Positions 8,259 to 58,472 are shown, counted from the stretch's first letter. The stretch: 64,000 bases of DNA from Styela clava (GCF_964204865.1 NC_135263.1:15438001-15502000); one strand, 5' to 3'. A program made the numbers and translations. Notes: generated by a model not told the origin, from the sequence alone.

Positions 8259-10284
8259 ATGTTAACGATAAAAACGCTGGGTCTGCTTTTACTAGTTAGC
8301 TGGTCAAATGCATTTGATGATACTCCAGCTTGTGCACAGATTGAAAATTTATTTCAAACACTTTGTGCCCGAGACGGGACACATACATCAATCGGAATGG
8401 AAACATCTCAGGGTTCTCCGGGGAAGAGAGGACCAGTTGGAGAAAAAGGTGAAATAGGTCGGCCTGGACCCGTCGGGCCTCCGGCTATTGTGGATTACGA
8501 ACGCATCGAAACTGAGATAGAAGAGAAGGTTGCGCCAGGTAAGATGATTTTTCAGCTGGCGGTACAACTGATATACTGAAAATCACGAAAGACACTGTTC
8601 CTATTCCTACGGTCGAATATAAAAAGACTCGACCCTTTGAAAATCCGTATTGCTTAACTTGTTATTATTTTAAAAACTGAACTCATAAAAATACCGTTTG
8701 ATTTTCGACATTATACACATCTGCAACAGATCCACTTTATGAAATAATTTAGCACAATTATATAACACTTGAAGCAATTTTAATTTTTTCTAGTAAGCTG
8801 TTGACTTCATGTTGTTCAAAAATATTTACACCCTTTTTAGTTATCAGTCAATCAGCTGCGAACAACACCGCCCTCATCTTGGCGATAGCGAAATTGGAAG
8901 AACGAATAAATATTCTAGAAAGCAGAGAAGGTATTCAGAAAAATACAACAGCAATCTTTAAACCGGTATATGGCTGCGTCCATGTAGACTTCGGCCAATA
9001 AAAAAAGTCCAAACGAAAATTCATCTCCTGCATAATATTTGTAGTAATAAACATCGATTCTTTGGTACTCCAGTAGTGTGTGTACCAGGTTTGGGTTAGG
9101 CATAATTTTATTCCGATTTGCCTTATTTTAGTTCTATTACGACTGTATGTGTTAGCCGAGTGAATATACCTCCTGCCCATATGTTTCAGTGCGTTTACAC
9201 AACTTGATGTAACGTAGGCGAACAAAATTAGTTACCTCCATATTGGTACACATACTTCTTGGGGGCCGATTTTTTTACATAAGCTTATTCCCGCTTCTTC
9301 CTCGCCGACAGTATATAATTCAACAGTTAATTACCTCGTGTATTTTCCTATATTATTCAGGTGCGTGTGAGATAAAGTTCGACGGTAAATGCTACTGGGT
9401 AGAGAGTCTCGATCATTTTGTGACAGGCTATGAAAGATGGGTCGCAATATGTGCGGAACGGAATGGCTCACCAGCGAATATTTATTCGGAAAAACATTAC
9501 AATGTCATCATGCGATACCTTCGAGCGAAAATATTTGCAAAGAGGGATCTGATTGCCCTATGGGTGGGAATGCGAACAAACCCAGATGTAAATAAATTTA
9601 TACCTTTTCTTCAATTCAAATTGGTAAAAATGTTTTAACAAAGCCCGCATTCCTAACAAATTTTAACGTTTCTTGGCATATGTTTATTGAAAATAAAGTG
9701 ATTGTTTTGTAATTTTGAATTCTTGTTGTTACCGTATGAAAAAAGTCGCCATGCGTGACGGCTGTCTTTCGTTTTGCTTTTTACGAACTGGTACTATGCG
9801 AAAGTCGGAGGTTATTTGATACCGGTACCCACTGTAGACTAGGTACTGAGACTGCTTCGTTTTAAACTTCGTGTCATTATATATATAAACATCCTCTCTT
9901 GTTGTTCCCTGTTAGAGATATATTAAACGAGCGTTTGGAGAATACCAATTTTATAATTTGTAATTACATTCGTCCAAGATGCCACACGTATACTAAATCA
10001 AAATCTTTTGTATTTTCCCTCGTCGCTAATTCTATGTTATGAAACGAAAATAAGCTTGACTTTGTTGCAAGAAACACTGTTGTTTTTCTTTGCAGACTCT
10101 AATCGTTACACTTTCCGACGGAAGTCTAGCTCCATTTATGAAATGGGCTCCTGGATATCCCTCTAAAGATCCTGCTTATACGCACATGACAATTGCTCAA
10201 CGAGCTCCATCAAGTTCTGCCAGCATTGGTATTCACAACTATCCACCAACGTCCAGCAGAGAAGGCGTATTATGTGAATTATAG
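8259..10284 (+). CDS. Collectin-like secreted protein, copy 1 (exons 8259-8538, 8841-8930, 9361-9587, 10096-10284; 261 aa)
   Basis: Signal peptide MLTIKTLGLLLLVSWSNA; collagen GSPGKRGPVGEKGEIGRPGPVGPP; heptad neck (LILAIAKLEERINILE); CTLD motifs CEIKFDGKCY, ICAERNG, LWVGM, LSDGS, KWAPGYP, GVLCEL*. GT-AG junctions join in frame (280+90+227+189 nt) and are identical in all paralogues. Confidence 0.9.
9064..9267. mobile_element. Merlin-like MITE in intron 2 of copy 1 (also 17303-17506 and 56850-57061)
   Basis: GG..CC termini (ggtactcc...); 8-bp TSD gattcttt (exact in copy 7); copy 3 shows the empty site; internal ggttagg motif. The superfamily assignment is inferred from termini and TSD length. 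Confidence 0.75.
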
Positions 10285-11694
10285 AGCAATAGCAATGCTT
10301 CGGATAATTTTCTTGACATGGAAATACTTTGTATTTTCACCTAAATCTAGGAGGCACCACTTTGAAATGTTATATATATATGAAATATATCCAAATGTAT
10401 AAAGGTAACAAAGTCTATTTTTAACGGTGTAGAAAACCATCTCACAACAAATAATTCTGTATCACACACCAGAACGCGAGTTTAGAATCTTATTGTGTAC
10501 ACCGAATCAATTGACGCTATATTGGAAATATTGAAGTTTGGGTCGACGAGACGTGAGTTGCGCAAGTCAACCACAAGATCATGCTCTGACAAAAAATCAG
10601 CTGTGATCAGTCTCTGACAATAACGAGTAGACTGCGTGGTTGTGTAACATTTTCTTTAATTAAAACGGCAATGATAAAATTAAAATGCGATGAAACAGTA
10701 ACTGACTTAATTTAAAGTTGGATTGAGGCAGAAGGTTACTTGTTGCGATTGAGGTGCGTGTGGTCGCAGAGTTGAAAGTAGAGTGCCAAAAATTTGAAAC
10801 CAAAAATATCAGAACGTGGCGAGTGAGTCATGTGACTAATCAACGGCTAATGCGACCCTGACCTAGATGTTGCTATAAGTTTTTTGTTAATTTTGCAACC
10901 GTAAAAGCGGATTCCGCACTTCTGATTTAATCAGTGGATATGCGCAAATACTGCCAACGCGCGAGAATTACAATGTCTTTGAGCCTGAGTGAAATATTTG
11001 AGATTGCTGTACGTCCGTGGGTAACATGACGTCCAATAGTTTCCTAATTTTGCAAAATCGTTGCTCAAAAACTAAATGTCGTGAATTAAGATGACTCACC
11101 TTTTTTTTCTTTTTTCTGCAACTTTACCCTAAGGCGAGTATTCATGTTATGTTCAATGTTTGCTCAATATATACTCGATATGCTCACTATAATCAAATCT
11201 TCACTCAGTCTGCTGTGTGCTACTATGCTGTTACGTTGCCCGTGGTCACCTCACTCTTTTTTGTAACGGATTTGTTTTACGGACAATAATCTTTTTAATT
11301 ATATTTATTATTTGACTTGTTTCTATTCTACCTGTATCAAAGTTAGACTTTTATCACGGGTGTTGCTGCCCGATGTTGGCATCAAGTATATTTTCATTAT
11401 GGTGAATTGCCTCCTAGGCATATTGGACTGCAATATTTGACCGTATGTTTGATATTTTTAATTTTGACAAGACGTGCACATCGAGTGCAATATACATGTA
11501 AAAACTTGTTCTATGTCAATATGTCTTCACCGTAAATGAAAAATTGTGATTTTATGTCTAAAATGCATCAGTTTTGTTATGAAAAATTCAAAAATTGTAT
11601 GCAGGTGTGCCATGTCTGGTCATCGAAACTTTGCTAACGCCCATAGCAATCGCTAAGTAGCGTAGATGTTCATCGTTGTTCTGTATTTTGTATA

Positions 11695-12189
11695 CCGTAT
11701 ATGCTCGTTTTTCCGCCCGATCTTGATTAAGGGCCCGTTTGAATAGCCGCCCGATGTAAAAGCTGATTTTTCAGTGGTAGAGAACAATAGAAAATAAGAA
11801 GTGGTCACAACGCTGTTGAATTTTAAGCGCCGGTAGATAACACTCACGCCTTAGGCGTCCAAGTACATAACAGATAGCATTTATTACGTAACACCATGGT
11901 TCTCAAACTAGGCGTCGCGACGCCCAAGTGCGTTGTTTCAATATTGATAGGGCGTCGCAAAACTTTTCTTCTTTTGCGGATTTGTACCTGCGGTGCGTAG
12001 AAAAAGTAAAAATTTTCGTTATTCTCGTTTAAATCATACTTGAGAACTGGAAATAACAATATATTAATTATTGTAACGATCGAAAATAACAAGCGCCCGT
12101 GCTTGAATAAGGGCCGGTTTGAATAAGGGCCCGGTTAGTGAGTTGGTTGAAAAAATATGGGCCCGGGCTATAAAACGAGCAAATACGGG
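11695..12189. mobile_element. Tc1/mariner-pogo-like MITE (second copy 19934-20428)
   Basis: TA-flanked TIR ccgtatatgctcgtttt...aaaacgagcaaatacgg inserted into a tatata site that is empty in paralogous modules; carries a nested hAT-like end (tggttctcaaact, about 11896). Confidence 0.8.
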
Positions 12190-12737: not shown

Positions 12738-13076
12738 ACTCCAATCGTTACACTTTCCGACGGAAGTCTAGCTCTATTTATGAAATGGGCTCCTGGATAT
12801 CCCTCTAAAGATCCTGCTTATACGCACATGACAATTGCTCAGCGAGCTCCATCAAGTTCTGCCAGCATTGGTATTCACAACTTCCCACCAACGTATACCC
12901 GAGATGGCGTATTATGTGAATTAAAAAGCAATCACAATGTAACAAAGTCTAATTTCAATAGTGTAGATAACCAGCTCACAACAATCAAATTTGGGTTCAC
13001 ACACCAGAACGCTTGTTTGGAGTCTTATTGTTTTGCACCAAATGGACCTCGCCACATCACATCAAAGTTTACATAA
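12738..13076 (+). other. Orphan duplicate of exon 4 (CTLD C-terminal half) with intact acceptor and lost stop; alternative last exon or pseudo-exon
   Basis: tttgcag|ACT acceptor preceded by a copy of intron 3; encodes TPIVTLSDGS...HNFPPTYTRDGVLCEL plus a 50-aa extension. Confidence 0.75.
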
Positions 13077-16000: not shown

Positions 16001-16497
16001 TGTTTTTTGAAATTCGCTGCTGACTAGAACTCACGCTGATAAAAGAGTTTTTTGAGATGTCGTCGCAATTTTATGAGTTATGCTTTCGCATCCAAAAACT
16101 GGGGAGTTGGTTTGTATCTAACAGTTTCAAATAATGAGCATAAATCATGTGAATTTGCGCTAATTATGCAATAAAATAATAAAATAATACAATAATACAA
16201 TAATTAAATATTGCAAAATATTCAAATTTTTTCTATATATATATTCTCATATGTACATACTTCGAATCACCGAGCACATTACTAAAAATCTCAGATTAAA
16301 CAAAACAGAAAAATAAGACAGAAAAGTTTTATATATTGTGTATTCATGTTGAGTGCAGTTTTATATTTCTGAAAAAGTTGACTTCCATTACAGCAATATT
16401 GGATAATAAAAAGATTGATTTGTTGTTTTATTTCTTTTTAAATTATTTTTATATTCATAAGTCTATATAAAATAGAATCATTAGATAGCTCTGCATC

Positions 16498-18523
16498 ATG
16501 TTAACGATAAAAACGCTGGGTCTGCTTTTACTAGTTAGCTGGTCAAATGCATTTGATGATACTCCAGCTTGTGCACAGATTGAAAATTTATTTCAAACAC
16601 TTTGTGCCCGAGACGGGACACATACATCGATCGGAATGGAAACATCTCAGGGTTCTCCGGGGAAGAGAGGACCAGTTGGAGAAAAAGGTGAAATAGGTCG
16701 GCCTGGACCCGTCGGGCCTCCGGCTATTGTGGATTACGAACGCATCGAAACTGAGATAGAAGAGAAGGTTGCGCCAGGTAAGATGATTTTTCAGCTGGCG
16801 GTACAACTGATATACTGAAAATCACGAAAGACACTGTTCCTATTCCTACGGTCGAATATAAAAAGACTCGACCCTTTGAAAATCCGTATTGCTTAACTTG
16901 TTATTATTTTAAAAACTGAACTCATAAAAATACCGTTTGATTTTCGACATTATACACATCTGCAACAGATCCACTTTATGAAATAATTTAGCACAATTAT
17001 ATAACACTTGAAGCAATTTTAATTTTTTCTAGTAAGCTGTTGACTTCATGTTGTTCAAAAATATTTACACCCTTTTTAGTTATCAGTCAATCAGCTGCGA
17101 ACAACACCGCCCTCATCTTGGCGATAGCGAAATTGGAAGAACGAATAAATATTCTAGAAAGCAGAGAAGGTATTCAGAAAAATACAACAGCAATCTTTAA
17201 ACCGGTATATGGCTGCGTCCATGTAGACTTCGGCCAATAAAAAAAGTCCAAACGAAAATTCATCTCCTGCATAATATTTGTAGTAATAAACATCGATTCT
17301 TTGGTACTCCAGTAGTGTGTGTACCAGGTTTGGGTTAGGCATAATTTTATTCCGATTTGCCTTATTTTAGTTCTATTACGACTGTATGTGTTAGCCGAGT
17401 GAATATACCTCCTGCCCATAAGTTTCAGTGCGTTTACACAACTTGATGTAACGTAGGCGAACAAAATTAGTTACCTCCATATTGGTACACATACTTCTTG
17501 GGGGCCGATTTTTTTACATAAGCTTATTCCCGCTTCTTCCTCGCCGACAGTATATAATTCAACAGTTAATTACCACGTGTATTTTCCTATATTATTCAGG
17601 TGCGTGTGAGATAAAGTTCGACGGTAAATGCTACTGGGTAGAGAGTCTCGATCATTTTGTGACAGGCTATGAAAGATGGGTCGCAATATGTGCGGAACGG
17701 AATGGCTCACCAGCGAATATTTATTCGGAAAAACATTACAATGTCATCATGCGATACCTTCGAGCGAAAATATTTGCAAAGAGGGATCTGATTGCCCTAT
17801 GGGTGGGAATGCGAACAAACCCAGATGTAAATAAATTTATACCTTTTCTTCAATTCAAATTGGTAAAAATGTTTTAACAAAGCCCGCATTCCTAACAAAT
17901 TTTAACGTTTCTTGGCATATGTTTATTGAAAATAAAGTGATTGTTTTGTAATTTTGAATTCTTGTTGTTACCGTATGAAAAAAGTCGCCATGCGTGACGG
18001 CTGTCTTTCGTTTTGCTTTTTACGAACTGGTACTATGCGAAAGTCGGAGGTTATTTGATACCGGTACCCACTGTAGACTAGGTACTGAGACTGCTTCGTT
18101 TTAAACTTCGTGTCATTATATATATAAACATCCTCTCTTGTTGTTCCCTGTTAGAGATATATTAAACGAGCGTTTGGAGAATACCAATTTTATAATTTGT
18201 AATTACATTCGTCCAAGATGCCACACGTATACTAAATCAAAATCTTTTGTATTTTCCCTCGTCGCTAATTCTATGTTATGAAACGAAAATAAGCTTGACT
18301 TTGTTGCAAGAAACACTGTTGTTTTTCTTTGCAGACTCTAATCGTTACACTTTCCGACGGAAGTCTAGCTCCATTTATGAAATGGGCTCCTGGATATCCC
18401 TCTAAAGATCCTGCTTATACGCACATGACAATTGCTCAACGAGCTCCATCAAGTTCTGCCAGCATTGGTATTCACAACTATCCACCAACGTCCAGCAGAG
18501 AAGGCGTATTATGTGAATTATAG
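16498..18523 (+). CDS. Collectin-like protein, copy 2 (exons 16498-16777, 17080-17169, 17600-17826, 18335-18523); protein identical to copy 1
   Basis: Offset of 8239 nt from copy 1 with the same splice sites; only a synonymous change was seen in exon 1. Confidence 0.88.
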
Positions 18524-25759: not shown

Positions 25760-28416
25760 ATGTTAACGTTAAAAACGCTGGGTCTGCTTTTGCTTGTTAG
25801 CTGGTCAAATGCATTTGATGATACTCCAGCTTGTACGAAAATTGAGAACTTATTTCAAACACTTTGTGCCCGATACGGAGCACATACATCAATCGGAATC
25901 GAAACATCTCAAGGTTCTCCGGGGAAGAGAGGACCAGTTGGAGAAAAAGGTGAAATAGGTCGGCCTGGACCTGTCGGGCCTCCAGCTATTGTGGATTACG
26001 AACGAATCGAAACTGAAATAGACGAGAAGATTGTGCCAGGTAAAATGATTTTTCGGTTGGCCGTAAAACTGAAAGCGTTGAAAATCGTGAAAGAGACTGT
26101 TTCTGTGATCAAATATGATGTGCTTCGAAATCCGTATTGCTTTAACTTGCTATTATTTTCGAAATTGCACTCATAATGATGTCATTTGATTTTTTACATT
26201 ATACTCTCTGCAACAAATCCACTAAACCAGGGGTTCCCAAACCGCGGCCCGCGGGCCAATTACGACCCGCGTAACGATTTAAAATGGCCCGCCGGAGTTA
26301 AGTGAAATAATTTAACGGTTAAACTTTTTGAAGTAAATGGCAGCGTTCTTATTTCTTTATTAAAAAAAATCAAACTTCAGCGATTTGTCTTCCTTGCCAA
26401 CAAAATATGCCAGTTCTGAAGGAATATGACATTAGGCGCCATTATGAGACGAAGCATTTTTCGAATTATGATCAGTTGATGCGCGTATTTCAAAATTCAA
26501 TGCTAAATTCATAAAAAAGTCAAATAAACATGTTTAAGTTTCCCGATTTAAGAAGTTAATTTTTCAGCATCAGTCTTTCTAACAACACAATTATGAACCT
26601 TAACAAAACAAAACTTCGGTCCGGACTGCATGATAGATAATCACTTGAATGCGTTGTTGCGAATATAATGTACTGAATTGGAGCCACGTAAAGAACATCT
26701 GCCCTAATTACACCTACAAAAATATAGAATTGGTATATACAAAAACAAACAACCAAATCATGTTGGCATTTCGTTTTTTTTATACTTATATACATTGGGA
26801 TGTTTTTTGTGCAACAAAACAAGCCATAAGTAGCCTCATTTATACGAAGCCGTATATTCCAGATGAGCAAGTAACTTCAATCAGTTATCATAACAAACTG
26901 CGATGCTAGGTGTAATAATATCAAGCTTGCAGTCTATTTTAGTGCTTAATTTTTAAAATTTTCTCAGCCGTGGCGTCGAGCTCTTTTTGTCGCTCACCTT
27001 TTCTGGTCCGCGAATATCCTTTAGCTTCGAAATTTGGCCCGCGGTCAATCAACTTTGGGAACCCCTGCACTAAACCCTAAAAAGTTTGACTGAATTTGTG
27101 AATTTTAGCACAATTATTTAATACGTGAAGCTGTTGACATCATCTTGTTAAAAATACTTACACCCTTTTCAGTTATCAGTCAATCATCTGTAAACAACAA
27201 CGCCCTTACCTTGGTGATTGAGAAATTGGAGGAACGAAAAAAGATTTTAGAAAGCAGAGAAGGTATGCAGAAATATACAACAGCAATCCGTACAAAACCG
27301 TACAGAGCTGCGTTCATGTAGACTCCGGTCAAAAAAAAAGTCTAATCGATAATTTGTCTTTTGAATAATCTTGGTAGTAAACATCGATTCTTTCAAATAA
27401 GCTCATGCCCGCTTTTACTAGAAAATAATGTGTATTCCTAAATCATTCAGGGGCGTGTGAGATAAAGTTCGACGGTAAATGCTACTGGGCAGAGAGTCTT
27501 GATCATGGCGTGACAGGCTATGACAGATGGGAAGCCACATGTGCAGAACGGAATGGCTCACCAGCGAATATTTATTCGGAAAAACATTACAATGTCATCA
27601 TGCGATACCTTCGCGCGAAAATATTTGCGAAGAGTAGTGGGATTTATCTATGGGTGGGAATGCGAACAAACCCAGCTGTAAATATATTTATATATATATT
27701 TTTTCAATTTGAATTGTAAAATATGTTTTAACAAAGTCCGCATTTGTAGCAAATTTGAACGTTTCTTGATAATCTTTACCTGACGATCGTTGGTAATTTT
27801 CCAAAGGCTTTGTGATTAAAGATTGTTGTTTTCGCTAGAAGCCTATTACTTGTATTTATTCCAAAATTTTCTATGAATCCCATGAGATCTAATATTTTAT
27901 CTAACATTTCGCTATCCCATTTTTTTCCTTCACGAGAACGCGATTTTCATGCAGACAAGTTACTAAGATGCGGCAAACTACTTCGTTTTATACTTCGTGT
28001 TAATATATAATTGAACAATTCCCCCTTGTTGTTTTCATTAGAGATATATTAAACGAGCGTTTGGAGAATACTAATTTTCTAATTTGTGATCAAATTGTAA
28101 GAACGTCCAGTATGCCACACGTATACTGAAGCAAAATATTTTGTATTTTCCCTCGTCACTAATTCTATGTTATGAAACGAAAAAGAGCTTGACTTTGTTG
28201 CAGGGAACAATATTCTTTTCTTTACAGACTGGAATCGTGACACTTTCCGATGGAAGTCGAGCTCCATTTATGAAATGGTATCCTGGATATCCCTCTAAAC
28301 GTTTTGATCATACGCACATGACAATTGTTCAAAGAGTTCCATCAAGTTCTGCCGAGATTGGTATCCACAATTGGCCGCCAACGTCCAGCAGAGGGGGCGT
28401 ATTATGTGAATTATAG
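25760..28416 (+). CDS. Collectin-like protein, copy 3 (exons 25760-26039, 27173-27262, 27451-27677, 28228-28416)
   Basis: Same exon lengths and phases with an open frame; intron 1 is enlarged by a hAT insertion; CTLD C-half is KWYPGYPSKRFDHTHM...HNWPPTSSRGGVLCEL. Confidence 0.9.
26228..27067 (+). mobile_element. Internally deleted hAT (Charlie/SPIN-like) DNA transposon in intron 1 of copy 3
   Basis: TIR caggggttcccaaa...tttgggaacccctg; 8-bp TSD cactaaac on both sides; transposase remnants WQRSYFF..AICLPCQQNMPVLKEYDIRRHYETKH and MNLNKTKLRS..DNHLNALLRI; absent from the other paralogues. Confidence 0.92.
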
Positions 28417-38937: not shown

Positions 38938-40490
38938 ATGTTAACGATAAAAACGCTGGGTCTGCTTTTACTCGTTAGCTGGTCAAATGCATTCGATGAT
39001 ACTCCAGCTTGTACGCAAATTGAAAATTTATTTCAAACACTCTGTGCCCGAGACGGGACACATACATCAATCAGAATCGAAACATCTCAAGGGTCTCCTG
39101 GGAAGAGAGGACCAGTTGGAGAAAAAGGGGAAATAGGCCGGCCGGGGCCCGCCGGGCCTCCAGCTATTGTGGATTATGAACGCATCGAAACTGAAATAGA
39201 AGAAAAGGTTGCGCCAGGTAAGATGATTTTTCAACTGGCGGTACAATTGAAAACATTAAAAATCATGAAAGACGCTGTTCTTATTCCTATGGTCGAATAT
39301 GAAAAGGCTCGACTCTTCTTCAAAAATCCTTTTTGCTCAACTTGTTAATATTTTCAAAACTGAACTCATAATAATGCCGTTTGATTTTTGACATTAAACA
39401 CATCTGCAACAGATCCACTTTTTAAAATAATTTAGCACAATTATATAACACCTGGAGTTTTTTTGATTTTCTTCTTTGTAAGCTGTTGACTTCCTCTTGT
39501 TCAAAAATACATACACCCTTTTTCAGTTAGCAGTCAATCAGCTGCAAACAACAACGCCCTCACCTTGGTGATTGAGAAATTGGAGGAACGAATAAAAATT
39601 TTAGAAAGCAGAGAAGGTATGCAGAAATATACAACAGCAATCTTTAAAACAGTACAGAGCTGCGTCTATGTAGACCTCGGTCAATAAAAATAGTCCAATC
39701 GAAAATTCGTCTTCTGAATAATCTTGGTAGTAAATTCTTTCACATAATTTCACGTCCGATTTTACCTCGCCGAGAGTATATAATTCAACTTAACAGAAAA
39801 ATTACTACATGTATTTTCCTATATTATTTAGGTGCGTGTGAGATAAAGTTCGACGGTAAATGCTACTGGGTAGAGACTCTTGATCATTCTGTGACAGACT
39901 ATGACAGATGGGAAGCCACATGTGCAGAACGGAATGGATCACCAGCAAACATTTATTCGAAGAAACATTACAATGTTATTATGCGATACCTTCGAGCGAA
40001 AATACTGACAAAGAGGGGAGTGATCGCCATATGGGTGGGAATGCGAACAAACCCAGCTGTGAATATATTTCTCTTTTCTTTTCAGTTCGGGTTGTTGAAA
40101 ATGTTTTAACAAAGTATATACATATATTAAGTGAGCGTTTGGATAATACCAATTTTATAATTTGTGATCGCATGGTAAGAATGTCAAAATGACACACGTA
40201 TACTAAAGCAAAATCTTTTACATTTTCCCTCGTCACTAATTCTATGTTATAAAACGAAAAAATGCTTGGCTTTGTTGCAGGAAACAATTTTTTTTTCACA
40301 GACTGGAATCGTGACACTTTCCGATGGAAGTCGAGCTCCATTTATGAAATGGTATCCTGGATTTCCCTCTAAACGTTCTGATCATACGCACATGACAATT
40401 GTTCAAAGAGTTCCATCAAGTTCTGCCAGCATTGGTATCCATAACTGGCCACCAACGCACACCAGAGAAGGCGTATTATGTGAATTATAG
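38938..40490 (+). CDS. Collectin-like protein, copy 5 (exons 38938-39217, 39527-39616, 39832-40058, 40302-40490)
   Basis: Intact GT-AG sites and frame; CTLD C-half is KWYPGFPSKRSDHTHM...HNWPPTHTREGVLCEL. Confidence 0.9.
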
Positions 40491-45781: not shown

Positions 45782-47620
45782 ATGTTAACGATAAAAACGC
45801 TGGGTCTGCTTTTACTTGTTAGCTGGTCAAATGCATTTGATGATACTCCAGCTTGTACGCAAATTGAAAATTTATTTCAAACACTCTGTGCCCGAGACGG
45901 GACACATACATCAATCAGAATCGAAACATCTCAAGGGTCTCCTGGGAAGAGAGGACCAATTGGAGAAAAAGGTGAAATAGGCCGGCCTGGACCCGTCGGG
46001 CCTCCAGCTATTGTGGATTATGAACGCATCGAAACTGAAATAGAAGAGAAGGTTGCGCCAAGTAAGATGATTTTTCAGCTGGCGGACAATTGAAAGCAAT
46101 AAAAATCACGAAAGACGCTGTTCTTATTCCTATGGTTGAATATGAAAGGGCTCGACTCTTCTTCAAAAATCCGTTTTGCTTAACTTATTAATATTTTCAA
46201 AACTGAACTCATAAAAATGCCATTTGATTTTTGGACATTATACACATCTGCAACAGATCCACTTTATAAAATGATTTAGCACAATTATATAACACGTGGA
46301 GCAATTTTAATTTTCTTTATTGTAAGCTGTTGACTTCATCTTGTTCAAAAATACATACACCCTTTTCAGGTATCTGTCAATCAGCTGCGAACAACAACGC
46401 CCTTACCTTGGTGATTGAGAAATTGGAGGAACGAATAAAGATTTTCGAAAGCAGAGAAGGTATGCCGAAAAATACAACAGCAATCTTAAAAACCGTATAG
46501 AGCTGCGTTCATGTAGACTCCGGTCAAAAAAAGTCAAATCGAAAATTCATCGTTTCAATAATCTTGGTAGGAAACATCTTGGTAGTAAACAAACTTTCTT
46601 ATAAGCTCATGCCCGATTTTACCAGAAAATGATGTATATTCCTAAATTATTCAGGGGCGTGTGAGATAAAGTTCGACGGTAAATGCTACTGGGTAGAGAG
46701 TCTTGATCATGGTGTGACAGGCTATGACAGATGGGAAGCCTCATGTGCAGAACGGAATGGCTCACCAGCGAATATTTATTCGGAAAAACATTACAATGTC
46801 ATCATGCGATACCTTCGAGCGAAAATATTTGCAAAGAGTAATGGTATTTACCTATGGGTGAGAATGCGAACAAACCCAGCTGTAAATATATTTACATATA
46901 TATTTTTTTCAATTTGAATAGTAAAATATGTTTCAACAAAGTCCGCATTTGTAGCAAATTTTAACGTTTCTTGATACTCTTTACCTGACGATCGTTTGTA
47001 ATTTTCCAAAGGCTTTGTGATTAAAGACTGTTGTTTTCGCTAGAAGCCTATTACTTGTATTTATTCCAAAATTTTCTATGAATCCCATGAGATCTAATAT
47101 TTTATTCAACATTTCGCTATCCCATTTTTTTCCTTCACGAGAACGCAATTTTCATGCAGACAAGTTACTAAGATGCGGAAAACTACTTCGTTTTATACTT
47201 CGTGTTGATATATATTTGAAATCTTCCACTTGTTGTTTTCATTAGAGATATATTAAACGAGCGTTTGGAGAATACCAATTTTCTAATTTGTGATCACATT
47301 GTAAAAACGTCCAGGATGCCACACGTATACTGAAGCAAAATATTTTGTATTTTCCTTCGTCACTAATTCTATGTTATGAAACGAAAAGTTGTTTGACTTT
47401 GTTTCAGGAAACAATATTCTTTTCTTTACAGACTGGAATCGTGACATTTTCCGATGGAAGTCGAGCTCCATTTATGAAATGGTATCCTGGATATCCCTCT
47501 AAATCTTCTGCTTATACGCACATGACAATTGTTCAAAGAGTTCCATCAAGTTCTGTCAACATTGGTATTCACAACTGTCCACCAACGTCCAGCAGAGAGG
47601 GCGTATTATGTGAATTATAG
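45782..47620 (+). CDS. Collectin-like protein, copy 6 (exons 45782-46061, 46370-46459, 46655-46881, 47432-47620); possibly degenerating
   Basis: Frame is open, but WVGM has become WVRM, there are new Cys residues in the neck (SICQ) and at HNC, and the exon 1 donor context is changed (CAA|gtaag). Confidence 0.8.
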
Positions 47621-50264: not shown

Positions 50265-50648
50265 AAGCGAGTCTCTACCCAGTAGCATTTACCGTCGAAC
50301 TTTATCTCACACGCCCCTGAATAATATTGGGAAATGCATGTGTTAATTAAGTGTTAAGTTGAATTATATACTCTCGGCGAGATAAAAGAGGGCATGAACT
50401 TATGTGAAAGAATTTACTACCAAGATTATTCAGAAGACGAATTTTCGATTGGAAGTTTTTTTATTGACCGAGGTCTACATGGACGCAGCTCTGTACTGTT
50501 TTAAAGACTTCTGTTGCATTTTTCTGCATACCCTCTCTTCTCTACTTTCTAGAATCTTTATTCGTTCCTCCAATTTCTCAATCACCAAGGTGAGGGCGTT
50601 GTTGTTCGCAGCTGATTGACTGATAACTGAAAAGGGTGTAAGTATTTT
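50265..50648 (-). pseudogene. Inverted collectin gene fragment (exon 2 at 50626-50532, intron 2, 5' part of exon 3 from 50316)
   Basis: The reverse complement encodes VISQSAANNNALTLVIEKLEERIKILESRE (exon is 95 nt, +5) and ACEIKFDGKCYWVE; it is truncated at both ends. Confidence 0.9.
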
Positions 50649-51490: not shown

Positions 51491-54400
51491 TCATGTGATT
51501 CCAAACCTTATCTGTTAAACTTCTCCCTTATCAAATCTTTCAACCTTTTTATTCTTCCCCCACTATGCACAAAAACAAAAACTGTATTAATTGATTTCTT
51601 TAGATCTTTGTCTATTGCCCTAGTTGAAAAACCGATTTTGTACAGTTCCAGTATTTTCTAATTGTATGTGTGCATTGTATTATAAGAGGCAGAGCGAACT
51701 TTGGGAAACCAGTAATGCTACAGAAAATACAAAGCCGATTCCTCCTCAAAAGGACAAAGTTACTCGCCAGGGATGAATTTTTTTCCAGTTTGGAAAACGT
51801 GCCCCCAATGAATGAGATATTTGTAGACAAATTACGTAATAAATAATACTATCTTTACCTATAGTATATGCTCAATCAGTCAATGCTCAATTGAAGCAAT
51901 TCGTTCATTTTTGTTAGAAAGACGCATTCGTAAAGCAGACTAAGTCCGTCAAAGACATGACTTTATGTTTTTTGCAGTAAATGCGCCAAAAATATATGAT
52001 CACAATGACTTAAGAAATTGTGATTGTAGTATTTTTTCAATCGGGCTAATATCATTAAGTACGAATGACTTGAAGATGAAAAAAATAAGGGAACTTAACA
52101 TAGAAATAAAAAGAAATTGGTATAAAATAGTAAAAGCAATTGATGCTTGCAATAAAATACCAAACATATTGGCAGAAAAAAATATAAGGTATTGCAGTTA
52201 CATATAAAATCGGAGAAAAAAATGCAATAGAATGATAAAAATATCATAAAACAATATGGTAGTATTCATGTTAGATGGGGCAATAATTTTTTGGTTCGAT
52301 AGATAATGTCAACATCTGTTCGGGACATTGATAACTTTTACATATCATATTAGTCTACAAGCTACCTGAACTATTCTCTTATTGCTCTAAATTAAAGAAA
52401 AAAATGACGAAATCGAAAAAAACATGATAAATATTCAGCGAATAACTAGGTTGCAAAGCAATTAAAGAAGTTAAAACCAAGGGTGTGCAACCTTTAATAC
52501 AGAAGGACCAGATAAAGATAACTGAGTAAAACTGCAGGTCGCACTTTCATTCAACATAGGCTTTCTGGTAATAGCAAGCCCAAAAGTTTTAGTTATTGAT
52601 GACATGGGTCACAAATTATGACTTGGTTTATCAGTGTCGGAATAAAGCCGGGTACCAACATAGGTGCAGCCAAAATTTTCGGTGAAATTAAAACAGACCA
52701 CCCAAAGTGCAATTCACGACGACGTGAGGCGTTTAATAAACTGAAAAGAATGCGTCGTTCACAGCGAAATTCCACAGTTACATGTAGCCCGTCTCTTATG
52801 TGCCGGGCGGTTTATGGTGAATATTTTGCAAGTCCTATTTCAAATATCGATCCTTAATCCGTAGTCAGCAGTACCCGCATTCGAAAATAGAACATTAGAA
52901 ATCGTGTAAAATAATTTTGAGAGAAGTGTAACTCGCAGATGTCAGTAGTGCCAAAATCGTTACAAAAGTACAAAAACACGCTCGCATGTAGCGCCGATCA
53001 AACGCATTAAATGTGAAACTATTACTTGGATTTTAATGTTAAACAAGTTGATTTTTAATTGCCATTCAATGATAATTAACATGCGTCGTGATTAGTGGTG
53101 GGCAAATAGTTTTTTTAGCCGAATTATTCGAATATTTTCAACGAACACAACACCAAATATTGAGTATTGTCATTTCAAACAACCGTGTTTGGAATGTCGG
53201 CCGCCGTAACGATCGCCGTGACAATTTTATTTTTCGGAATTTACTTGAAGACTGGAAACTTCGCAACAATGCAGCGATTTTTATTTCCTAATTTTGTCAT
53301 AATCCATGACCGCAGTGAATATTTTCGTCACCGCGATCCTTTCGGCGGCTTGACTTCCCAACTGATGATGATAAACTATATTAAAGTCCTTTTATTCACT
53401 AGTAAATATTAATTCTCATGCAACAGCGGATATCGCAGTTTGGTTTTTATTTTTTGGACAGAAATTTGATTTCACATCGGCGACGATGTCAAAGACAACT
53501 ATTAGGGAGTGCATTCACAACACAAATTAATTTTATGCTGCTTTTAATCTTTTTTGTAGGATTTGTATCACAGTTTGTAAATTAAGGTCCCAGTTTTAAG
53601 CGAACAGTATTACTGACCCCAGAATGCGATATTTTTGAAGCTGATAGTTGACTTTTTTATGCTTAATTTTATATCGTGTCCGTGTTACTTCCGTATTAAA
53701 TATTAATAATTAAAAACTCCGCAAATTGGTAATCTCTCTAATACTCATTGTTGAGAATTCACGTAACTCAGCTTTGGAATAAAACACTGATACTAAATAC
53801 TTGAATAAATCGGCAATAATGGCATTTCCACGTGGTCAAAATAATATTTTTCCCCGTCCCCAATATGTCGGAAAATTTCCATAGAATACAAAATTTACCA
53901 GTCGTACTTATCTGGTTCGACAATTCTAAATTTACAAAAACGGTGTTGGCGCGCTTTATTCAAAATTAGAAAATGAAAAATATGATAATTCTTACCCGTA
54001 AGTGGGACAAGTGGGACAAGACATTTTGGAGACTCCCCTCGGTATACCGCGAAAAACTTGTTCCCATTGAAATCTTCACTCAGTCTACTGTGTGCTGCTA
54101 TGCTGTTACGTTACCCGTAGTTACCTCATCGGTACTTAACGGTGCCCGGAGTCTCTTTTTTGTAACAGATTTGTTTTTTCGGACATTATTGTTTTTAATT
54201 ATATATATTGTTTGACTTCTTTCTATTCAACCTGAATCAAAGTTAGGTTTTTATCACGGGTGTAGCTGCCCGAGTTTCGCATCAAGTCCATCTTCAAGTT
54301 GGTGAATCACCTCCTAGGCATATTAGGCTGCAATATTTGATTTGACCTTAGGTTTGATATTAAAGGCGTTTAGACAAGACTTGCACATCAAGTGCAATAT

Positions 54401-56054
54401 AAATGTAAAGACCTGTTTTATGTCAATAGGTCTTCACTCCAAATGAAACATTGTGGTTATTATGTTTAAAATGCATAAGTTTTGTTACGACAAATTTAAA
54501 AAAATGTGCCATGTCTGGTCATCGAAGCCGTCGCTAACACCCATAGCAATCGCTAAGTAGCTTAAAGATGTTTTATCGTTGTTCTTTATTTTGTATATAT
54601 GGATTTTTGCGTTGTCTCTTTGTTGCCCAAGTTTACAGTTTGGTATTTTAACGTCACAGACATAAAAAAAAATGTAGGTCTAACTCAAGCAAAAGTTATG
54701 AGACCTCTCCATGAAACCAGTCGTACATTCTGATCATTTGTGTTCATCAATCAATCAAACAAAACACACAAATACAAAAAAACTTTTATATTGTTGAACG
54801 ATGACATTGTTCAGTCCTGAATTGCTTTGAAAAAAATCTTACATGTTATCCGCATATTATAACGAAGTAATGACATTTTGCCAACTAGGTTTTTTTGTGT
54901 TCCAAGAATTAAAAACAATATGAGTTGTTGTTCGGATGAAAAATCTCCAAACGCAGCCTTTTCCTGGGCGTCATTTAGTCTGTATTGTAAACCTATTGAA
55001 AGCATTAAAGAAACGCACGACTGCCGAAATGGAGCGAAATCTACTGAACCTGAAAAATTTGAAGGAGCAAGGACCTATTAATAACTCGATAGCAAACCAT
55101 TATTTGGAAATGCATTTTTTGTAAGGTGATTGAGGCTGCAAAAATTTTTGCCTCTGTCATTCTTTGCAGGCAATTAGAAGGTGAATCAAAATCAGCTGAA
55201 CCTGAAAAATCAAAAACTTTACAGGAAACCATTATTTTCAAAACTGCATTTTTTAATGTAATTGAGAATTGAGAAAATTTTCGCGTTTGTCATTCGTTAC
55301 AGGCAATGAGAAGGTGCATCACGAAATAGCTTAAGTCAATCTTGAAACTTTTTTTTATAGTTGAGTTAAATTGTGTAATGTCGACTAATGAACAATTGTG
55401 ATTGCTCGTGGAATACTAATACTGCAATACTTGGTATGCTATTTGCCTAAATGCCAGGCAGTTGTTTGTGATATAAATAGTCAAAGGTTTAAATACGCTC
55501 GTGAGTGCAATATAAAAAAGCATAATGTAAAATCTTTGGACCCAGCGTTGATATTTTAGAACCCGGTGCTGACTGGAACTCACGCTGATAAAAGAGTTCT
55601 TTGGGATGTTGGCGCAATTTTATGAGTTATTCTTTCGCACCGAAGTAGGAGGGGATTGTATGTATCTAACAGTTTCAAATAATGAGCATAAATCATCTGA
55701 ATTTTTGCTATATACATTAATTAAGATATTGCTAAATATTCAAATTTTGTCTATATATATATTCTCATATGTATTGTATTGTATATGTATATATATATAT
55801 TCTCATATATATATACTTCGAAGCACCGAGCACATTGCTAAGATTCTTATATTAAACAAAACAGAAAAATAAGACAGAAAAGTTTTATATAATGTGTATT
55901 CATGTTGAGTGCAGTTTTGTATTCCTAAAAAAGTTGACTTCAACTACATCAATATTGGATAAAAATATGATTTGATTTGTTGTTTTCTTTCTTTTTAAAT
56001 TATTTTTATATTCACAAGCCTATATAAAATAGAATCATCAGATAGCTCTGCATC

Positions 56055-58472
56055 ATGTTAACGATAAAAACGCTTGGTCTGCTTTTGCTTGTTAGCTGGT
56101 CAAATGCATTTGATGATACTCCAGCTTGCACACAAATTGAAAACTTATTTCAAACACTTTGTGCCCGAGACGGGTCACATACATCAATCGGAATGGAAAC
56201 ATCTCAAGGTTATCCGGGGAAGAAAGGGCCAGTTGGAGAGAAAGTTGAAATAGGGCGCCCTGGACCTGTCGGACCTCCGGCTACTGTGAATTACGAACGC
56301 ATCGAAACTGAAATAGACGAGAAGATTGCGCCAGGTAAGATGATTTTTCAGTTGGCCATACGAATAAAATCGTGAAAGACACTGTTCCTATGGTCGAATA
56401 TGAAAGGGCTCGACTCTTCGAAAATCCGTATTGCTTAACTTGTTATTATTTTCAAAACTGAACTCATAATAATGCCGTTTGATTTTCGACATTATACACA
56501 TCTGCAACATATCCACTTTCTAAAATAATTTAGCACAATTATAGACTATAACACGTAGAGCATTTTTCATTTTACATTTTGTAAGCTGTTGACTTCATCT
56601 TGTTTAAAAATATTTACACCCCTTTTAGTTATCAGTCAATCAGCTGCAAACAACAACACCCTCACTTTGGTGATTGAAAAATTGGAGGAACGAATAAAGA
56701 TTTTAGAAAGCAGAGAAGGTATGCAGAAAAACACAACAGTAATCTTTAAAATCGTATAGAACTCCGTTCATGTAGACTTCGGTCAATAAAAAAGGCAATC
56801 GAAAATTCGTCTGATGTATAATCTTTGTAGTAATAAACATCGATTCTTTGTTACTCCCGTAGTGTGTGTACCAGGTTAGGGTTAGGGCATAATTTTATTT
56901 CGATTTTCATTATTTTAGTTCTATTACGACTGTCTGTGTTAGCCAAGTGAATATTTCCCCTATCCGTAGGTTTCAGTCCGTTTACACAACTTGATGAAAA
57001 GTAGGCGAACAAAATTAGTTATCGCCATTTTGTGACACATACTTCTGGGCTCTGGCGCACCGATTCTTTTACATAAGCTCATGCCCGCTTTTACCTCGCC
57101 GAGAGTATATATATAATTCAGCTTAACAGACAAATTAACACATGTATTTTCCTATGTTATTCAGGAGCGTGTGAAATAAAGTTCGATGGAAAATGCTACT
57201 GGGTAGAGAGTATTGATCATTTTTTTTTACTGGCTATGATAGATGGGTCGTAATATGTGCGGAACGGAATGGCTCACCAGAAAATATTTATTCCGAGAAA
57301 CATTACGAAGTGATCATGCGATACCTTCGAGTGAAAATATTGGCAAAGAGGGATGTGATTACCCTATGGGTCGGAATGCAAACAAACCCAGCTGTAAGTA
57401 TATTTCTATTTTTTTTTCATTTCAAATTGTTAAAAATGTTTTAACAAAGTCTGCATTTGTAACAATATTTTACGTTTCTTGAGTCCGACTCCGTTGCTAT
57501 CCGAAACTGCGCTTCCATTCGTATCAGCTTCAAAGTCTCTATCAAACGTGCAAAATATTTGTTGTATATTGTATTAAAATCAGCAATGGTGAAACAGTAC
57601 AAAATAGATAATAAAACACAAAAACAACGTAACTTAGTTGAGGTATCTTGTTAGGAGCGGTTGAGTTACGTGTGCTCCAAAGAGTGCGCGTAATGGGGTC
57701 ACATGACCTGGGCCTAGGTATCGCTATATTGATAATCTTGACCTGAGAATCGGTTTGCAATTTTGCATTCATTTTCTTATTGTTACCGTATGAAAGAAAA
57801 TCGCTTTTCCTCCTTTAACTACCGGAGCAAATGCTTTTTGATTGAATATTGTAGTTGTTGCTAAAAGTATTACTGTTATTCATTCCTAAATTTTCTATGA
57901 ATCCTATGAAGTCTGATATGTCATTCAAAATTTCGCTGTATTATTTTTTTTTAATAAGAACGCGACTTTTATTCTGTCAAACGTGATGGCTGAATTCTGT
58001 TTTGTGGACTATAGGTACTAAAAAGCGGCAAACTACCTCGTTTTAGCCTTCGTGCTAATATATATTCATACATCGGTCTCTTGTTGTTTACTGTTGGAGA
58101 TATATTAAACGAGCGTTTGGAGAATACCAATTTAATAATTTTTGATCACATTGTAAGAATGTCCAGGATGCCACACGTATATTGAGGCAAAATATTTTGT
58201 ATTTTCTCTCGTCACTAATTCCATGTTATGAAATGAAAAAAGGCTTGGCTTTATTGCAGGAAACAATGTTCTTTTCTTTACAGACTGGAATCGTGACACT
58301 TTCCGATGGAAGTCGAGCTACATTTATAAAATGGTATCTTGGATATCCTTCTAAAGATTCTGCTTATACGCACATGGCAATTGATCAAAGAGCCCCATCA
58401 AGTCGTAGCGACATTGGTATTCACAACTGGCCACCAACGCCCGGCAGAGGAGGCGTATTATGTGAATTATAG
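56055..58472 (+). pseudogene. Collectin-like copy 7, frameshifted (exons 56055-56334, 56629-56718, 57165-57393, 58284-58472)
   Basis: Exon 3 is 229 nt rather than 227 because of +2 nt in a T run at about 57220-57228, giving TAA at 57251-57253. There is also a Gly-to-Val break in the collagen (GEKVEI). Confidence 0.75.

What the first reader, a model, noticed from the sequence alone, without database searches (positions are those of the whole stretch)
8259..58472. Expanding tandem array of mini-collectins with loop-restricted hypervariability: candidate diversified innate recognition system
Seen: seven paralogues have near-constant signal peptide, collagen and CTLD framework, while differences concentrate in four short CTLD patches. 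These are after DH (F/G/A/S), before WVGM (FAKRDLIAL / FAKSSGIYL / LTKRGVIAL / FAKSNGIYL), after GYP/GFP (SKDPAY / SKRFDH / SKLSDY / SKRSDH / SKSSAY / SKDSAY) and after IHN (YPPTSSRE / FPPTYTRD / WPPTSSRG / WPPTHARE / WPPTHTRE / WPPTPGRG). Known: in collectins (MBL, SP-D, CL-K1) the long loop and beta4 region form the ligand site, and collagen plus neck drive trimerisation. Inference: a birth-and-death family under diversifying selection; the near-identical stalks could allow heterotrimers with combinatorial specificity.
Basis: partly seen in the sequence, partly recalled or inferred. Interest (0 to 1): 0.85.

Follow-up and report, generated by a model that had tools for sequence, protein, structure and literature searches.

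The report
Sea-squirt mini-collectin gene array
This stretch of the sea squirt Styela clava genome is a tandem array of small secreted collagen-stalked lectin-like genes that duplicate, decay and swap exons, and whose predicted binding loops vary fastest; it is a plausible but untested innate immune recognition family of a kind already known in outline.

Summary
The window (Styela clava, chromosome piece C18) holds seven four-exon genes for 261-residue secreted proteins. Each has a signal peptide, two N-terminal cysteines, eight Gly-X-Y triplets, a coiled-coil neck and a C-type lectin-like domain (CTLD).

Three corrections apply:
- Two copies encode identical proteins (8.2 kb units, 99.83% identical).
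- One copy is frameshifted.
- One quoted variant comes from an orphan last exon.

Variation is not confined to the loops: 37 of 78 variable residues lie outside the CTLD. The four patches are still the most variable part.

The array shows birth-and-death evolution with exon-level recombination. Trees for the four exons conflict at 100% bootstrap.

Diversifying selection is suggested, not shown. My standard site-model tests are significant (p about 1e-4), but the signal comes only from exon 4. It falls to p = 0.02 once the loops' faster rate is modelled. Taken as a whole, the loops evolve at the neutral rate.

The head lacks the calcium/sugar motifs and the inner disulfide, so it is not a classical collectin. 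The stalk keeps a Pro-Gly-Lys-X-Gly-Pro motif like the MASP (MBL-associated serine protease) docking site.

Expression could not be tested.

The scan has other notes on this window, and a related stalked-lectin family on another piece.

The parts
8259..10284 (+). Copy G1. Exons: 8259-8538 (signal peptide, 2 Cys, 8 Gly-X-Y triplets, start of neck); 8841-8930 (neck); 9361-9587 (first half of CTLD); 10096-10284 (second half of CTLD with the binding-face loops, plus stop).
   Evidence: GT-AG splice sites read. Translation. The same architecture as RefSeq proteins of sister copies.
16498..18523 (+). Copy G2. Its protein is identical to G1. It lies in a unit (14748-22991) that is 99.83% identical to 6509-14751.
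25760..28416 (+). Copy G3 (= RefSeq LOC120341429), intact, with a long intron 1.
32111..33674 (+). Copy G4 (= XP_077976233.1), intact. It has an extra Cys at residue 217.
38938..40490 (+). Copy G5 (= XP_077976405.1, LOC144432158), intact. This protein was used for the fold and trimer predictions.
45782..47620 (+). Copy G6 (LOC120341254), a chimera. Its exon 1 resembles G4/G5 and its exons 3-4 resemble the G3 group. It reads WVRM instead of WVGM and has Cys at residue 248.
   Evidence: The RefSeq model P0079 uses an upstream donor and skips 8 codons.
56055..58472 (+). Copy G7, a probable pseudogene. It has a +2 frameshift in a T9 run at about 57220-57228 in exon 3, and a Gly-to-Val break in the collagen. 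The next copy, just past the window end, carries the same defect.
12738..13076 (+). Orphan exon 4. The acceptor is intact and it is 93.5% identical to G1 exon 4. The stop is replaced, so the frame runs on for 51 more codons. An identical twin lies at 20978-21316.
50269..50641 (-). Inverted fragment of exon 2 plus the start of exon 3, a remnant of a broken copy.
8418..8435 (+). Pro-Gly-Lys-Arg-Gly-Pro (residues 54-59) in the collagen stalk of G1. [quoted passage not shown]
   Evidence: Sequence. Conservation in distant relatives. Motif definition in PMC2856262.
9534..9560 (+). Patch 2 (residues 182-190, the alpha2-beta2 junction just before WVGM). Hypervariable, but with no support for omega above 1.
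10168..10179 (+). Core of patch 3 (residues 224-227), just after the [Y/F]-P-S that replaces EPN. At least 10 non-synonymous and 0 synonymous changes among 8 copies.
10240..10263 (+). Patch 4 (residues 248-255), after I-H-N, which stands where WND would be. Residue 248 is Y, W, F or C.
51828..64000 (+). Second very young unit duplication: 51828-53309 matches 60657-62137 at 99.66%, and 53970-55832 matches 62138-64000 at 99.73%. The two units differ by a 660-bp dispersed repeat at 53310-53969.

Best explanation
The window is the core of a Styela-lineage tandem array of 'mini-collectin' genes. There are at least 10 units in 80 kb, and more relatives elsewhere on the same chromosome.

Shown or predicted:
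- Each intact gene encodes a secreted 261-residue chain. It has a signal peptide, two N-terminal cysteines, a very short collagen stalk (8 triplets), a roughly 45-residue coiled-coil neck and one CTLD.
- The chains are predicted to form parallel trimers through the neck.
- The head has the CTLD fold. It has lost the calcium/sugar motifs ([Y/F]-P-S in place of E-P-N, H-N-[Y/W/F/C] in place of W-N-D) and the inner disulfide. Any ligand binding is therefore non-classical and probably calcium-independent.
- The array grows by whole-unit duplication and loses copies to frameshifts and partial deletions.
- Unequal crossing-over in introns produces genes that combine exons from different lineages.
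- The last exon encodes the loops that form the ligand face in classical C-type lectins. These loops change about 5 times faster than the framework of the same exon, at roughly the neutral rate.

Inferred:
- A few loop codons (224, 225, 248, perhaps 217, 227 and 242) change faster than neutral, which suggests diversifying selection.
- The proteins are humoral recognition molecules.
- The conserved Pro-Gly-Lys-X-Gly-Pro in the stalk lets them dock a MASP-type protease, as MBL (mannose-binding lectin) and ficolins do.
For: - Gene models: splice sites and frames. Copies 3, 4 and 5 are identical to RefSeq proteins of Styela clava.
- Fold: the AlphaFold2 model has pLDDT above 90 over the CTLD and one long helix at residues 80-123. 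Foldseek finds Mincle, CD23, tetranectin, the CL-K1 trimer, langerin and SP-A at E about 1e-8. The family profile finds PDB CTLDs at E 6e-16 to 1e-7.
- Trimer: score 0.68 against a best control of 0.00. The mark was reached by 21 of 30 proteins solved as pairs and 0 of 23 solved as single chains. Runs agree in at least 71% of contacts, partner pLDDT is at least 82, and contacts follow a heptad pattern over 76-123.
- Lost motifs and disulfide: only 4 Cys are invariant in the head across 22 relatives. G-[Y]-P-S aligns with G-E-P-S of a mannose receptor CTLD.
- Stalk motif. The collagen segment has the lowest dN/dS, 0.11.
- Birth and death.
- Mosaics.
- Rates and selection.
- Family context: the S. 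clava genome paper reports an expansion of collectin/MBL and ficolin genes, many highly expressed at metamorphosis (PMC7540406).
Against: - There is no direct expression evidence. Only runs guessed to be RNA hold 7-21% of the words of a 5 kb stretch.
- Loop-wide dN/dS is 0.9-1.0, equal to the rate of flanking non-coding DNA. Synonymous changes also cluster in the loops. Unconstrained loops could therefore explain most of the pattern.
- Homoplasy from micro gene conversion could inflate the tree-based tests.
- One patch-2 variant looks like a compensated frameshift.
- Several 'intact' copies carry suspicious changes: G193R in the WVGM motif, a Gly-to-Glu break in the collagen, and unpaired Cys residues.
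- Pfam Lectin_C and Collagen scores are below the curated cut-offs for these proteins.
- The X residue of the stalk motif is Arg, Lys or Ser rather than aliphatic. Only one triplet precedes the lysine.
- The trimer pass may reflect the model's memory of solved collectin and tetranectin trimers.
Confidence: 0.58

Rival explanations
1. Neutral drift in a redundant, partly decaying array. The loops are simply unconstrained. Their variety, shuffled by gene conversion and unequal crossing-over, has no adaptive value, and many copies are on their way to becoming pseudogenes.
For: - Loop-wide omega is 0.99, and the loops' rate equals that of the flanking non-coding DNA.
- Synonymous changes are concentrated in the same loops.
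- Exon 3 patches show no omega above 1.
- Frameshifted, truncated and collagen-broken copies are common.
- There is a compensated-frameshift-like patch in L036.
Against: - Site-model tests reject the nearly neutral models, at p from 1.5e-4 down to 1e-5. The tests remain nominally significant after masking patch 2 (p = 6e-4) and after fitting loop-specific branch lengths (p = 0.017).
- A bootstrap under the null never came near the observed value.
- Codons 224-227 show at least 10 non-synonymous and 0 synonymous changes.
- Half of the loop positions are invariant, so the loops are not free of constraint.
- The rest of the protein is under purifying selection, with omega 0.1-0.4.
Confidence: 0.3
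2. The proteins are not immune receptors. They serve development or the matrix, for example larval tissue resorption, tunic assembly or settlement cues at metamorphosis. Copy-number growth would then give dosage rather than new specificities.
For: - The S. clava genome paper reports that many expanded complement and lectin genes peak at metamorphosis, and links complement signalling to tail regression (PMC7540406).
- The head lacks the classical sugar site.
- Two of the copies are identical or nearly identical duplicates.
Against: - A dosage explanation does not predict fast change focused on the ligand-face loops.
- The architecture and the lysine motif match humoral defence collagens.
- Related collagenous lectins of Styela plicata rise in inflammatory responses, according to a review (PMC5465252).
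Confidence: 0.12
3. The 'expanding' part is an assembly artefact. The 99.7-99.8% identical unit pairs would be two haplotypes of one locus placed in tandem.
For: The divergence of 0.17-0.3% is within the range of allelic differences. Read depth could not be checked.
Against: - The G7 and G8 units differ by a whole 660-bp dispersed repeat, so they are distinct sequences.
- Both pairs lie inside one long contig.
- Older duplicates of every age exist in the same array.
Confidence: 0.08

Closest known systems
Vertebrate collectins (MBL, SP-A, SP-D, CL-K1/CL-L1)
   Same: - The domain order is the same: N-terminal cysteines, collagen, coiled-coil neck, C-terminal CTLD.
- The closest structural matches include the CL-K1 trimer and SP-A.
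- A trimer through the neck is predicted.
- A lysine motif like the MASP site of MBL is present.
- CL-10/CL-11 heterocomplexes are a precedent for mixed oligomers (abstract of PMC6172411).
   Different: - There are only 8 Gly-X-Y triplets.
- There is no EPN/QPD or WND motif and no inner disulfide, so the heads are not classical calcium-dependent carbohydrate-recognition domains.
- Pfam scores are below the cut-offs.
- Orthology was not shown.
Tunicate collagenous lectins: Styela plicata collectin-like proteins, Ciona MBL-like collectins, and the expanded 'MBL/collectin' set of the S. clava genome paper
   Same: - The same animal group and the same general architecture.
- The S. clava paper already lists the collectin/surfactant-protein family as expanded and counts 25 MBL genes (PMC7540406).
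- S. plicata collectins rise in inflammation, according to the review PMC5465252.
   Different: None of the papers I could search describes this array, its loop variation, its exon mosaics or the loss of the calcium site. I could not compare sequences of the S. plicata proteins.
Calcium-independent CTLD receptors that evolve by birth and death (NK-cell Ly49/KLR families, snake-venom C-type lectin-like proteins); from general knowledge, not tested here
   Same: A CTLD fold without the calcium/sugar site, clustered multigene families, rapid change on the ligand face, and recombination between paralogues.
   Different: Those are membrane receptors or venom heterodimers without a collagen stalk. 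The relationship is one of fold only. CD69 and snake-venom CTLDs appear among the PDB sequence hits.
Collagen-stalked discoidin lectins of S. clava (earlier scan note s1-817517)
   Same: Per that note, the same genome, the same kind of short collagen stalk plus neck, and the same lysine motif. The stalk exon of the present family has at least 112 matches in the genome.
   Different: The head is a discoidin domain there and a CTLD here. I did not test whether the stalk exons are homologous.

Membership tests
CTLD superfamily (C-type lectin-like fold) | Double-loop alpha/beta fold with two helices, a WIGL-type strand and a long loop region | tested here: met
   The AlphaFold2 model has pLDDT above 90 over residues 124-261. 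Foldseek TM-scores of 0.67-0.79 (normalised by target length) to Mincle, CD23, tetranectin, CL-K1 and type II antifreeze proteins.
CTLD superfamily (C-type lectin-like fold) | Sequence match to the Pfam Lectin_C model above its curated cut-off | tested here: inconclusive
   P0001 scores 15.2 bits against a cut-off of 22.6, and only the first two thirds of the model match. Relatives P0013 (26.9) and P0006 (22.7) pass. The family profile hits PDB CTLDs at E 6e-16 to 1e-7.
CTLD superfamily (C-type lectin-like fold) | Both core disulfides (C1-C4 and C2-C3) | tested here: not met
   Only C126, C134, C154 and C259 are invariant across 22 relatives. No cysteines stand at the beta3 and post-beta4 positions.
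Collectins | N-terminal cysteine segment, collagen-like Gly-X-Y region, alpha-helical neck and C-terminal CTLD, in that order | tested here: met
   Translation shows C25 and C36, 8 triplets at residues 52-75, a helix at 80-123 and then the CTLD. Pfam Collagen gives E 4e-5 to 9e-4, below the cut-off because the stretch is so short.
Collectins | Trimerisation through the neck | tested here: met
   In silico only: score 0.68 against a best control of 0.00, with heptad contacts over 76-123. The pass may come from the model's memory of solved collectin trimers.
Collectins | Calcium-dependent carbohydrate-recognition site (EPN or QPD, plus WND) | tested here: not met
   [Y/F]-P-S stands where E-P-N would be. 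It aligns to G-E-P-S of a mannose receptor CTLD. I-H-N-[Y/W/F/C] stands where W-N-D would be.
Lectin-pathway recognition molecules (MBL, ficolins, CL-K1) | [quoted passage not shown] | tested here: met
   P-G-K-[R/S/K]-G-P at residues 54-59 in the copies, kept in distant relatives. The motif is as defined in PMC2856262. Xaa is not aliphatic here. Hydroxylation and binding were not testable.
Lectin-pathway recognition molecules (MBL, ficolins, CL-K1) | Physical association with a MASP and activation of C3 | not testable with these tools
   MASPs are reported in ascidians (review PMC5465252). I did not look for the S. clava gene.
Diversified innate recognition families (FREP-, VCBP-, 185/333-like) | Sequence diversity focused on the ligand-binding surface and driven by positive selection | tested here: inconclusive
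   Sites with posterior above 0.5 all lie in the CTLD: 143, 186, 187, 189, 217, 224, 225, 227, 242 and 248. The tests are significant only for exon 4, and weak once rate variation is modelled. The sites could not be mapped in 3D because no model coordinates were available.
Diversified innate recognition families (FREP-, VCBP-, 185/333-like) | Expression of many members in immune tissues and induction by challenge | not testable with these tools

The most novel reading that the evidence does not exclude
The array encodes a combinatorial repertoire of calcium-independent, complement-activating recognition molecules. Exon shuffling between paralogues and mixed trimers would multiply the specificities of the hypervariable last-exon loops, while every variant keeps the same MASP-docking stalk. 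That would be a germline-diversified front end to the lectin pathway in the closest invertebrate relatives of vertebrates. It would form part of a superfamily of more than 100 genes that share this stalk exon.
Probability: 0.12. Interest if true: 0.8.

Novelty: new variant of a known kind. Interest (0 to 1): 0.5.

Why it matters
Tunicates are the sister group of vertebrates and have no antibodies, so how they widen innate recognition is an open question. Here the collectin architecture is reduced to a minimum, the classical sugar site is replaced, and diversity is generated in the germline by duplication and exon exchange. If the stalk really docks a MASP and the loops really differ in specificity, the family would show how a complement-activating lectin scaffold can be turned into a variable repertoire. 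If not, it is one more lineage-specific lectin expansion, already counted in outline in the S. clava genome paper.

Tried and rejected
They were included only in a local alignment and tree of the exon-1 flanks inside run_python. The run search found only runs guessed to be RNA.
The species behind three unnamed Logan relatives therefore stays unknown.
- Pfam on single exons found only a weak Collagen hit.
- The word-indexed protein search found only S. clava proteins.
- Papers naming the locus tags: none. Papers on tunicate collectin arrays or their selection: none found.
- Other genes in the window: ten long ORFs outside the units gave no Pfam family.
- 3D mapping of the variable sites was not possible, because the tools return no model coordinates.
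Searches used single exons by reference or database protein ids.
- I rejected the idea that whole-gene or whole-domain dN/dS exceeds 1. It is 0.38 overall and 0.53 for the CTLD.
- I rejected positive selection on patches 1 and 2.

Full report
WHAT IS THERE

The window is G000:C18:15438001-15502000 of Styela clava. Earlier scan notes gave the species as a lead. I confirmed it because my spliced model of copy 5 is residue-for-residue the RefSeq protein XP_077976405.1 of S. clava.

A self-comparison shows a tandem array of 6.6-8.2 kb units.

All copies have GT-AG introns in phases 1, 1 and 0, and a 786-nt coding sequence:
- Exon 1 encodes the signal peptide, two cysteines, eight Gly-X-Y triplets and the start of the neck.
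- Exon 2 encodes the rest of the neck.
- Exons 3 and 4 encode the two halves of a C-type lectin-like domain (CTLD).

Ten long ORFs outside the units gave no Pfam family, so the window is essentially the array.

CHECK OF THE OBSERVATION

Five points need correcting:
- Copies 1 and 2 give identical proteins and sit in units that are 99.83% identical.
- Copy 7 has a +2 frameshift in a run of nine T in exon 3, and a glycine-to-valine break in the collagen. The next copy, just beyond the window, is a 99.7% duplicate with the same defect.
- The variant FPPTYTRD comes from an orphan fourth exon 2.4 kb downstream of copy 1. That exon has an intact acceptor, but its stop is replaced, so the frame runs on for 51 codons.
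- Variation is not confined to loops. Among eight intact family members, 78 residues vary, and 37 of them lie outside the CTLD. Twenty of the 49 neck positions vary.
- The family extends beyond the window. There are ten exon-3-bearing units within 80 kb, four more within 0.4 Mb, and three distant ones at 9.45 Mb on the same chromosome. Several are broken.

The four patches are still the most variable part of the head: 17 of 24 positions vary, against 24 of 114 elsewhere in the CTLD. That contrast was defined after seeing the data.

WHAT THE PROTEIN IS

Sequence evidence:
- Single exons gave only a weak Collagen hit in Pfam.
- A profile of exon 3 against 1.84 billion representative proteins returned full-length relatives. 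Of the 20 I looked up, 17 are S. clava proteins and 3 are unnamed transcript contigs.
- The word-indexed protein search also found only S. clava proteins.
- Sources name these proteins 'uncharacterized', 'pulmonary surfactant-associated protein A-like' or 'collectin-46-like'.
- The full protein scores below Pfam's cut-offs for Lectin_C (15.2 bits against 22.6) and for Collagen. Two relatives pass Lectin_C.
- A family profile finds solved CTLDs (DEC-205, PLA2R, mannose receptor, snake-venom lectin-like proteins, SP-A) at E from 6e-16 to 1e-5.

Structure prediction:
- An AlphaFold2 model built on 22 relatives is confident over the head (pLDDT above 90) and shows one long helix at residues 80-123.
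- Foldseek places it with Mincle, CD23, tetranectin, the CL-K1 trimer, langerin and SP-A.
- Three copies of residues 76-261 are predicted to form a parallel trimer through heptad contacts along 76-123. The score was 0.68 against a best control of 0.00. The mark was reached by 21 of 30 proteins solved as pairs and by 0 of 23 solved as single chains. The runs agree in at least 71% of contacts, and partner pLDDT is at least 82. The pass may rest on the model's memory of solved collectin-type trimers.

Differences from a classical collectin head:
- Across 22 relatives only four cysteines of the head are invariant: the N-terminal hairpin pair and the outer C1-C4 pair. The inner disulfide is missing.
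- Where classical lectins have W-x-x-G-E-P-N, these have W-x-P-G-[Y/F]-P-S. The exon-4 profile aligns this with the G-E-P-S of a mannose receptor CTLD.
- Where W-N-D would stand, they have I-H-N-[Y/W/F/C].

So the architecture is that of a collectin, but the head is a non-classical, probably calcium-independent CTLD. I reached it independently.

The stalk carries Pro-Gly-Lys-Arg-Gly-Pro at residues 54-59, with the lysine in the X position of its triplet. Related forms (P-G-K-[R/K/V]-G-x) are kept in relatives that are only 25-40% identical.

[quoted passage not shown] The collagen segment also has the lowest dN/dS of the protein, 0.11.

This makes docking of a MASP-type protease a reasonable, untested hypothesis. 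There are two caveats: Xaa is not aliphatic here, and only one triplet precedes the lysine.

HOW THE ARRAY EVOLVES

- Two whole-unit duplications are 99.7-99.8% identical.
- The second pair differs by a 660-bp block that is a dispersed repeat, with over 1000 candidate matches in the genome. The two units are therefore distinct loci and not one locus assembled twice.
- Older copies differ by 3-30% in their introns.
- Trees built from each exon with 200 nt of flank conflict at 100% bootstrap. The copy at 15.889 Mb groups with copy 1 for exons 2-3, but with the copy-6 group for exon 4. Copy 6 and its relatives group with copies 4/5 for exon 1, but with copy 3 for exon 3.
- Genes are therefore mosaics of exons from different lineages, most simply by unequal crossing-over in introns.
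- Pseudogenes, orphan exons and an inverted exon 2-3 fragment complete a birth-and-death picture.

IS THERE DIVERSIFYING SELECTION?

Pairwise Nei-Gojobori estimates (dN/dS):

| Region | dN/dS |
|---|---|
| Whole coding sequence | 0.38 |
| Exon 1 | 0.20 |
| Exon 3 | 0.39 |
| Exon 4 | 0.93 |

The patches were picked by their variability.

I wrote a codon likelihood program with a separate tree for each exon, to respect the recombination:
- M0 gives omega = 0.47.
- M1a against M2a gives 2dlnL = 17.6 (p = 1.5e-4).
- M7 against M8 gives 19.3, and M8a against M8 gives 17.8.
- About 4% of codons fall in a class with omega near 5.
- Thirty-five data sets simulated under M1a gave a maximum statistic of 4.99.
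- Sites with posterior above 0.5 are 143, 186, 187, 189, 217, 224, 225, 227, 242 and 248.

The controls weaken this result:
- One patch-2 variant looks like an insertion plus a deletion that restores the frame. Masking it leaves 2dlnL = 13.5.
- Exon 4 alone carries the signal (25.05, p = 4e-6). Exon 3 alone gives 2.4 (p = 0.3), and exons 1+2 give zero.
- Tree-free minimum counts show that synonymous changes are also concentrated in the binding-face loops, which I defined beforehand as residues 217-228 and 244-255. These loops have 0.47 synonymous and 0.42 non-synonymous changes per site. The rest of exon 4 has 0.11 and 0.12.
- Flanking non-coding DNA of exon 4 shows 0.36-0.43 changes per site.
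- With branch lengths fitted to the loops alone, omega is 0.99, and the M1a-M2a statistic falls to 8.2 (p = 0.017, 22% of loop codons at omega about 4).

The fair reading has three parts. Taken together, the loops evolve at the neutral rate, about five times faster than their framework. Half of the loop positions are invariant. A few codons, above all 224 and 225 (at least 10 non-synonymous and 0 synonymous changes over 224-227), exceed the neutral rate. That suggests diversifying selection on patches 3 and 4 but does not establish it. Micro gene conversion could also mimic recurrent change.

FUNCTION

Predicted: the proteins are secreted and trimeric, with the head loops pointing away from the stalk.

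Inferred: they act as humoral recognition molecules, possibly feeding a MASP.

Context:
- The S. clava genome paper lists the collectin/surfactant-protein family among the expanded families. It counts 25 MBL and 54 ficolin genes and reports that many of the expanded genes are highly expressed at metamorphosis (PMC7540406).
- A review reports that collectin secretion in Styela plicata rises in inflammation (PMC5465252).

I have no direct expression data for this array. Heterotrimers remain speculation. The collagen is nearly constant, but 9 of the 21 predicted neck contact positions vary between copies.

WIDER CONTEXT

The stalk exon has at least 112 matches in the genome. These include further arrays on C6 (13.27-13.60 Mb), C18 (16.03-16.08 Mb) and C19. 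Units from the C18 and C6 arrays also carry CTLD exons. The array is thus one branch of a large stalked-lectin superfamily.

NOVELTY AND SCORE

The existence and expansion of collectin-like genes in S. clava is published. I found the following in no paper: the array's anatomy, the non-classical head, the exon mosaics, the loop-focused fast evolution, and the conserved lysine motif in such a short stalk. I class the finding as a new variant of a known kind.

Interest is moderate. The pattern is what comparative immunologists expect of invertebrate lectin expansions, and the key claims (selection, expression, binding) are still open.

- Joined spliced sequences were used only inside scripts, never typed or sent to search tools.
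- The codon program is my own, with branch lengths fixed from M0 up to a scale factor.

Noticed in passing
window 12738-13076 and 20978-21316: An orphan copy of exon 4 lies 2.4 kb downstream of copies 1 and 2. It has an intact acceptor and an open frame, with 6 residue differences from G1 exon 4. The stop is replaced (TTA AAA), adding 51 codons. Whether it is ever spliced to exon 3 is unknown.
   Followed up: partly
window 57220-57228, and the next copy at G000:C18:15503382: The +2 frameshift of copy 7 lies in a run of nine T. It is shared by its 99.7% duplicate, so it predates the duplication or is a systematic homopolymer error.
   Followed up: partly
window 53310-53969: A 660-bp block is present in the copy-7 unit and absent from its young duplicate. 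It is a dispersed repeat with more than 1000 candidate matches in the genome at 81-95% identity, probably a non-autonomous transposon that is or was recently active.
   Followed up: partly
G000:C6:13.27-13.60 Mb; C18:16.03-16.08 Mb; C19:5.3-6.0 Mb (L041, L042): The stalk exon (signal peptide, short collagen, start of neck) has at least 112 matches genome-wide, many in further tandem arrays. One array has about 30 copies on C6, and another has 8 copies spaced 6.96 kb apart on C18. Sampled units from the C18 and C6 arrays also have CTLD exons.
   Followed up: partly
window exon 4 of all copies (e.g. 10096-10284): Outside the loops, synonymous sites of exon 4 show only 0.11 changes per site, against 0.36-0.43 in the flanking non-coding DNA and 0.43-0.52 at synonymous sites of the other exons. 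No explanation was tested. Homogenisation by conversion or constraint at the RNA level are possibilities.
   Followed up: no
L036:4524-4750 (copy at C18:15508825), residues 185-189: The patch-2 variant RSTNF, against SNGIY in its closest relatives, looks like a one-base insertion and a one-base deletion a few codons apart. A compensated frameshift would thus create four new residues at once.
   Followed up: partly
L033/L034 (C18:15.221-15.228 Mb): RefSeq LOC120341454 isoform X1 joins exons 1-2 of one array unit to exons 3-4 of the next unit. Isoform X2 uses the first unit's own defective exon 3 and ends early. Partial units can therefore be stitched into one gene model.
   Followed up: partly
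window 50269-50641 (-) and L031:536-895: The same inverted fragment (exon 2 plus the start of exon 3) lies between copies 6 and 7, and again next to the inverted copy at 15.889 Mb. This suggests a shared segmental duplication.
   Followed up: no
window 30774-30940 and 37411-37561: A 16-nt minisatellite (unit GTGCAAATGTCCATGG, about 10 copies) recurs in the spacers upstream of copies 4 and 5.
   Followed up: no
window 46655-46881 (copy 6, exon 3): Copy 6 has Arg in place of the Gly of the WVGM core motif. The RefSeq model for this gene (P0079) uses an upstream donor that skips exactly these 8 codons. This may be an escape by alternative splicing or only a prediction artefact.
   Followed up: no
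residue 248 (copies 6, L032, L036) and residue 217 (copy 4): Several copies gained an odd, unpaired cysteine in the binding-face loops. It could form disulfide links between heads or to ligands, or mark decay.
   Followed up: no
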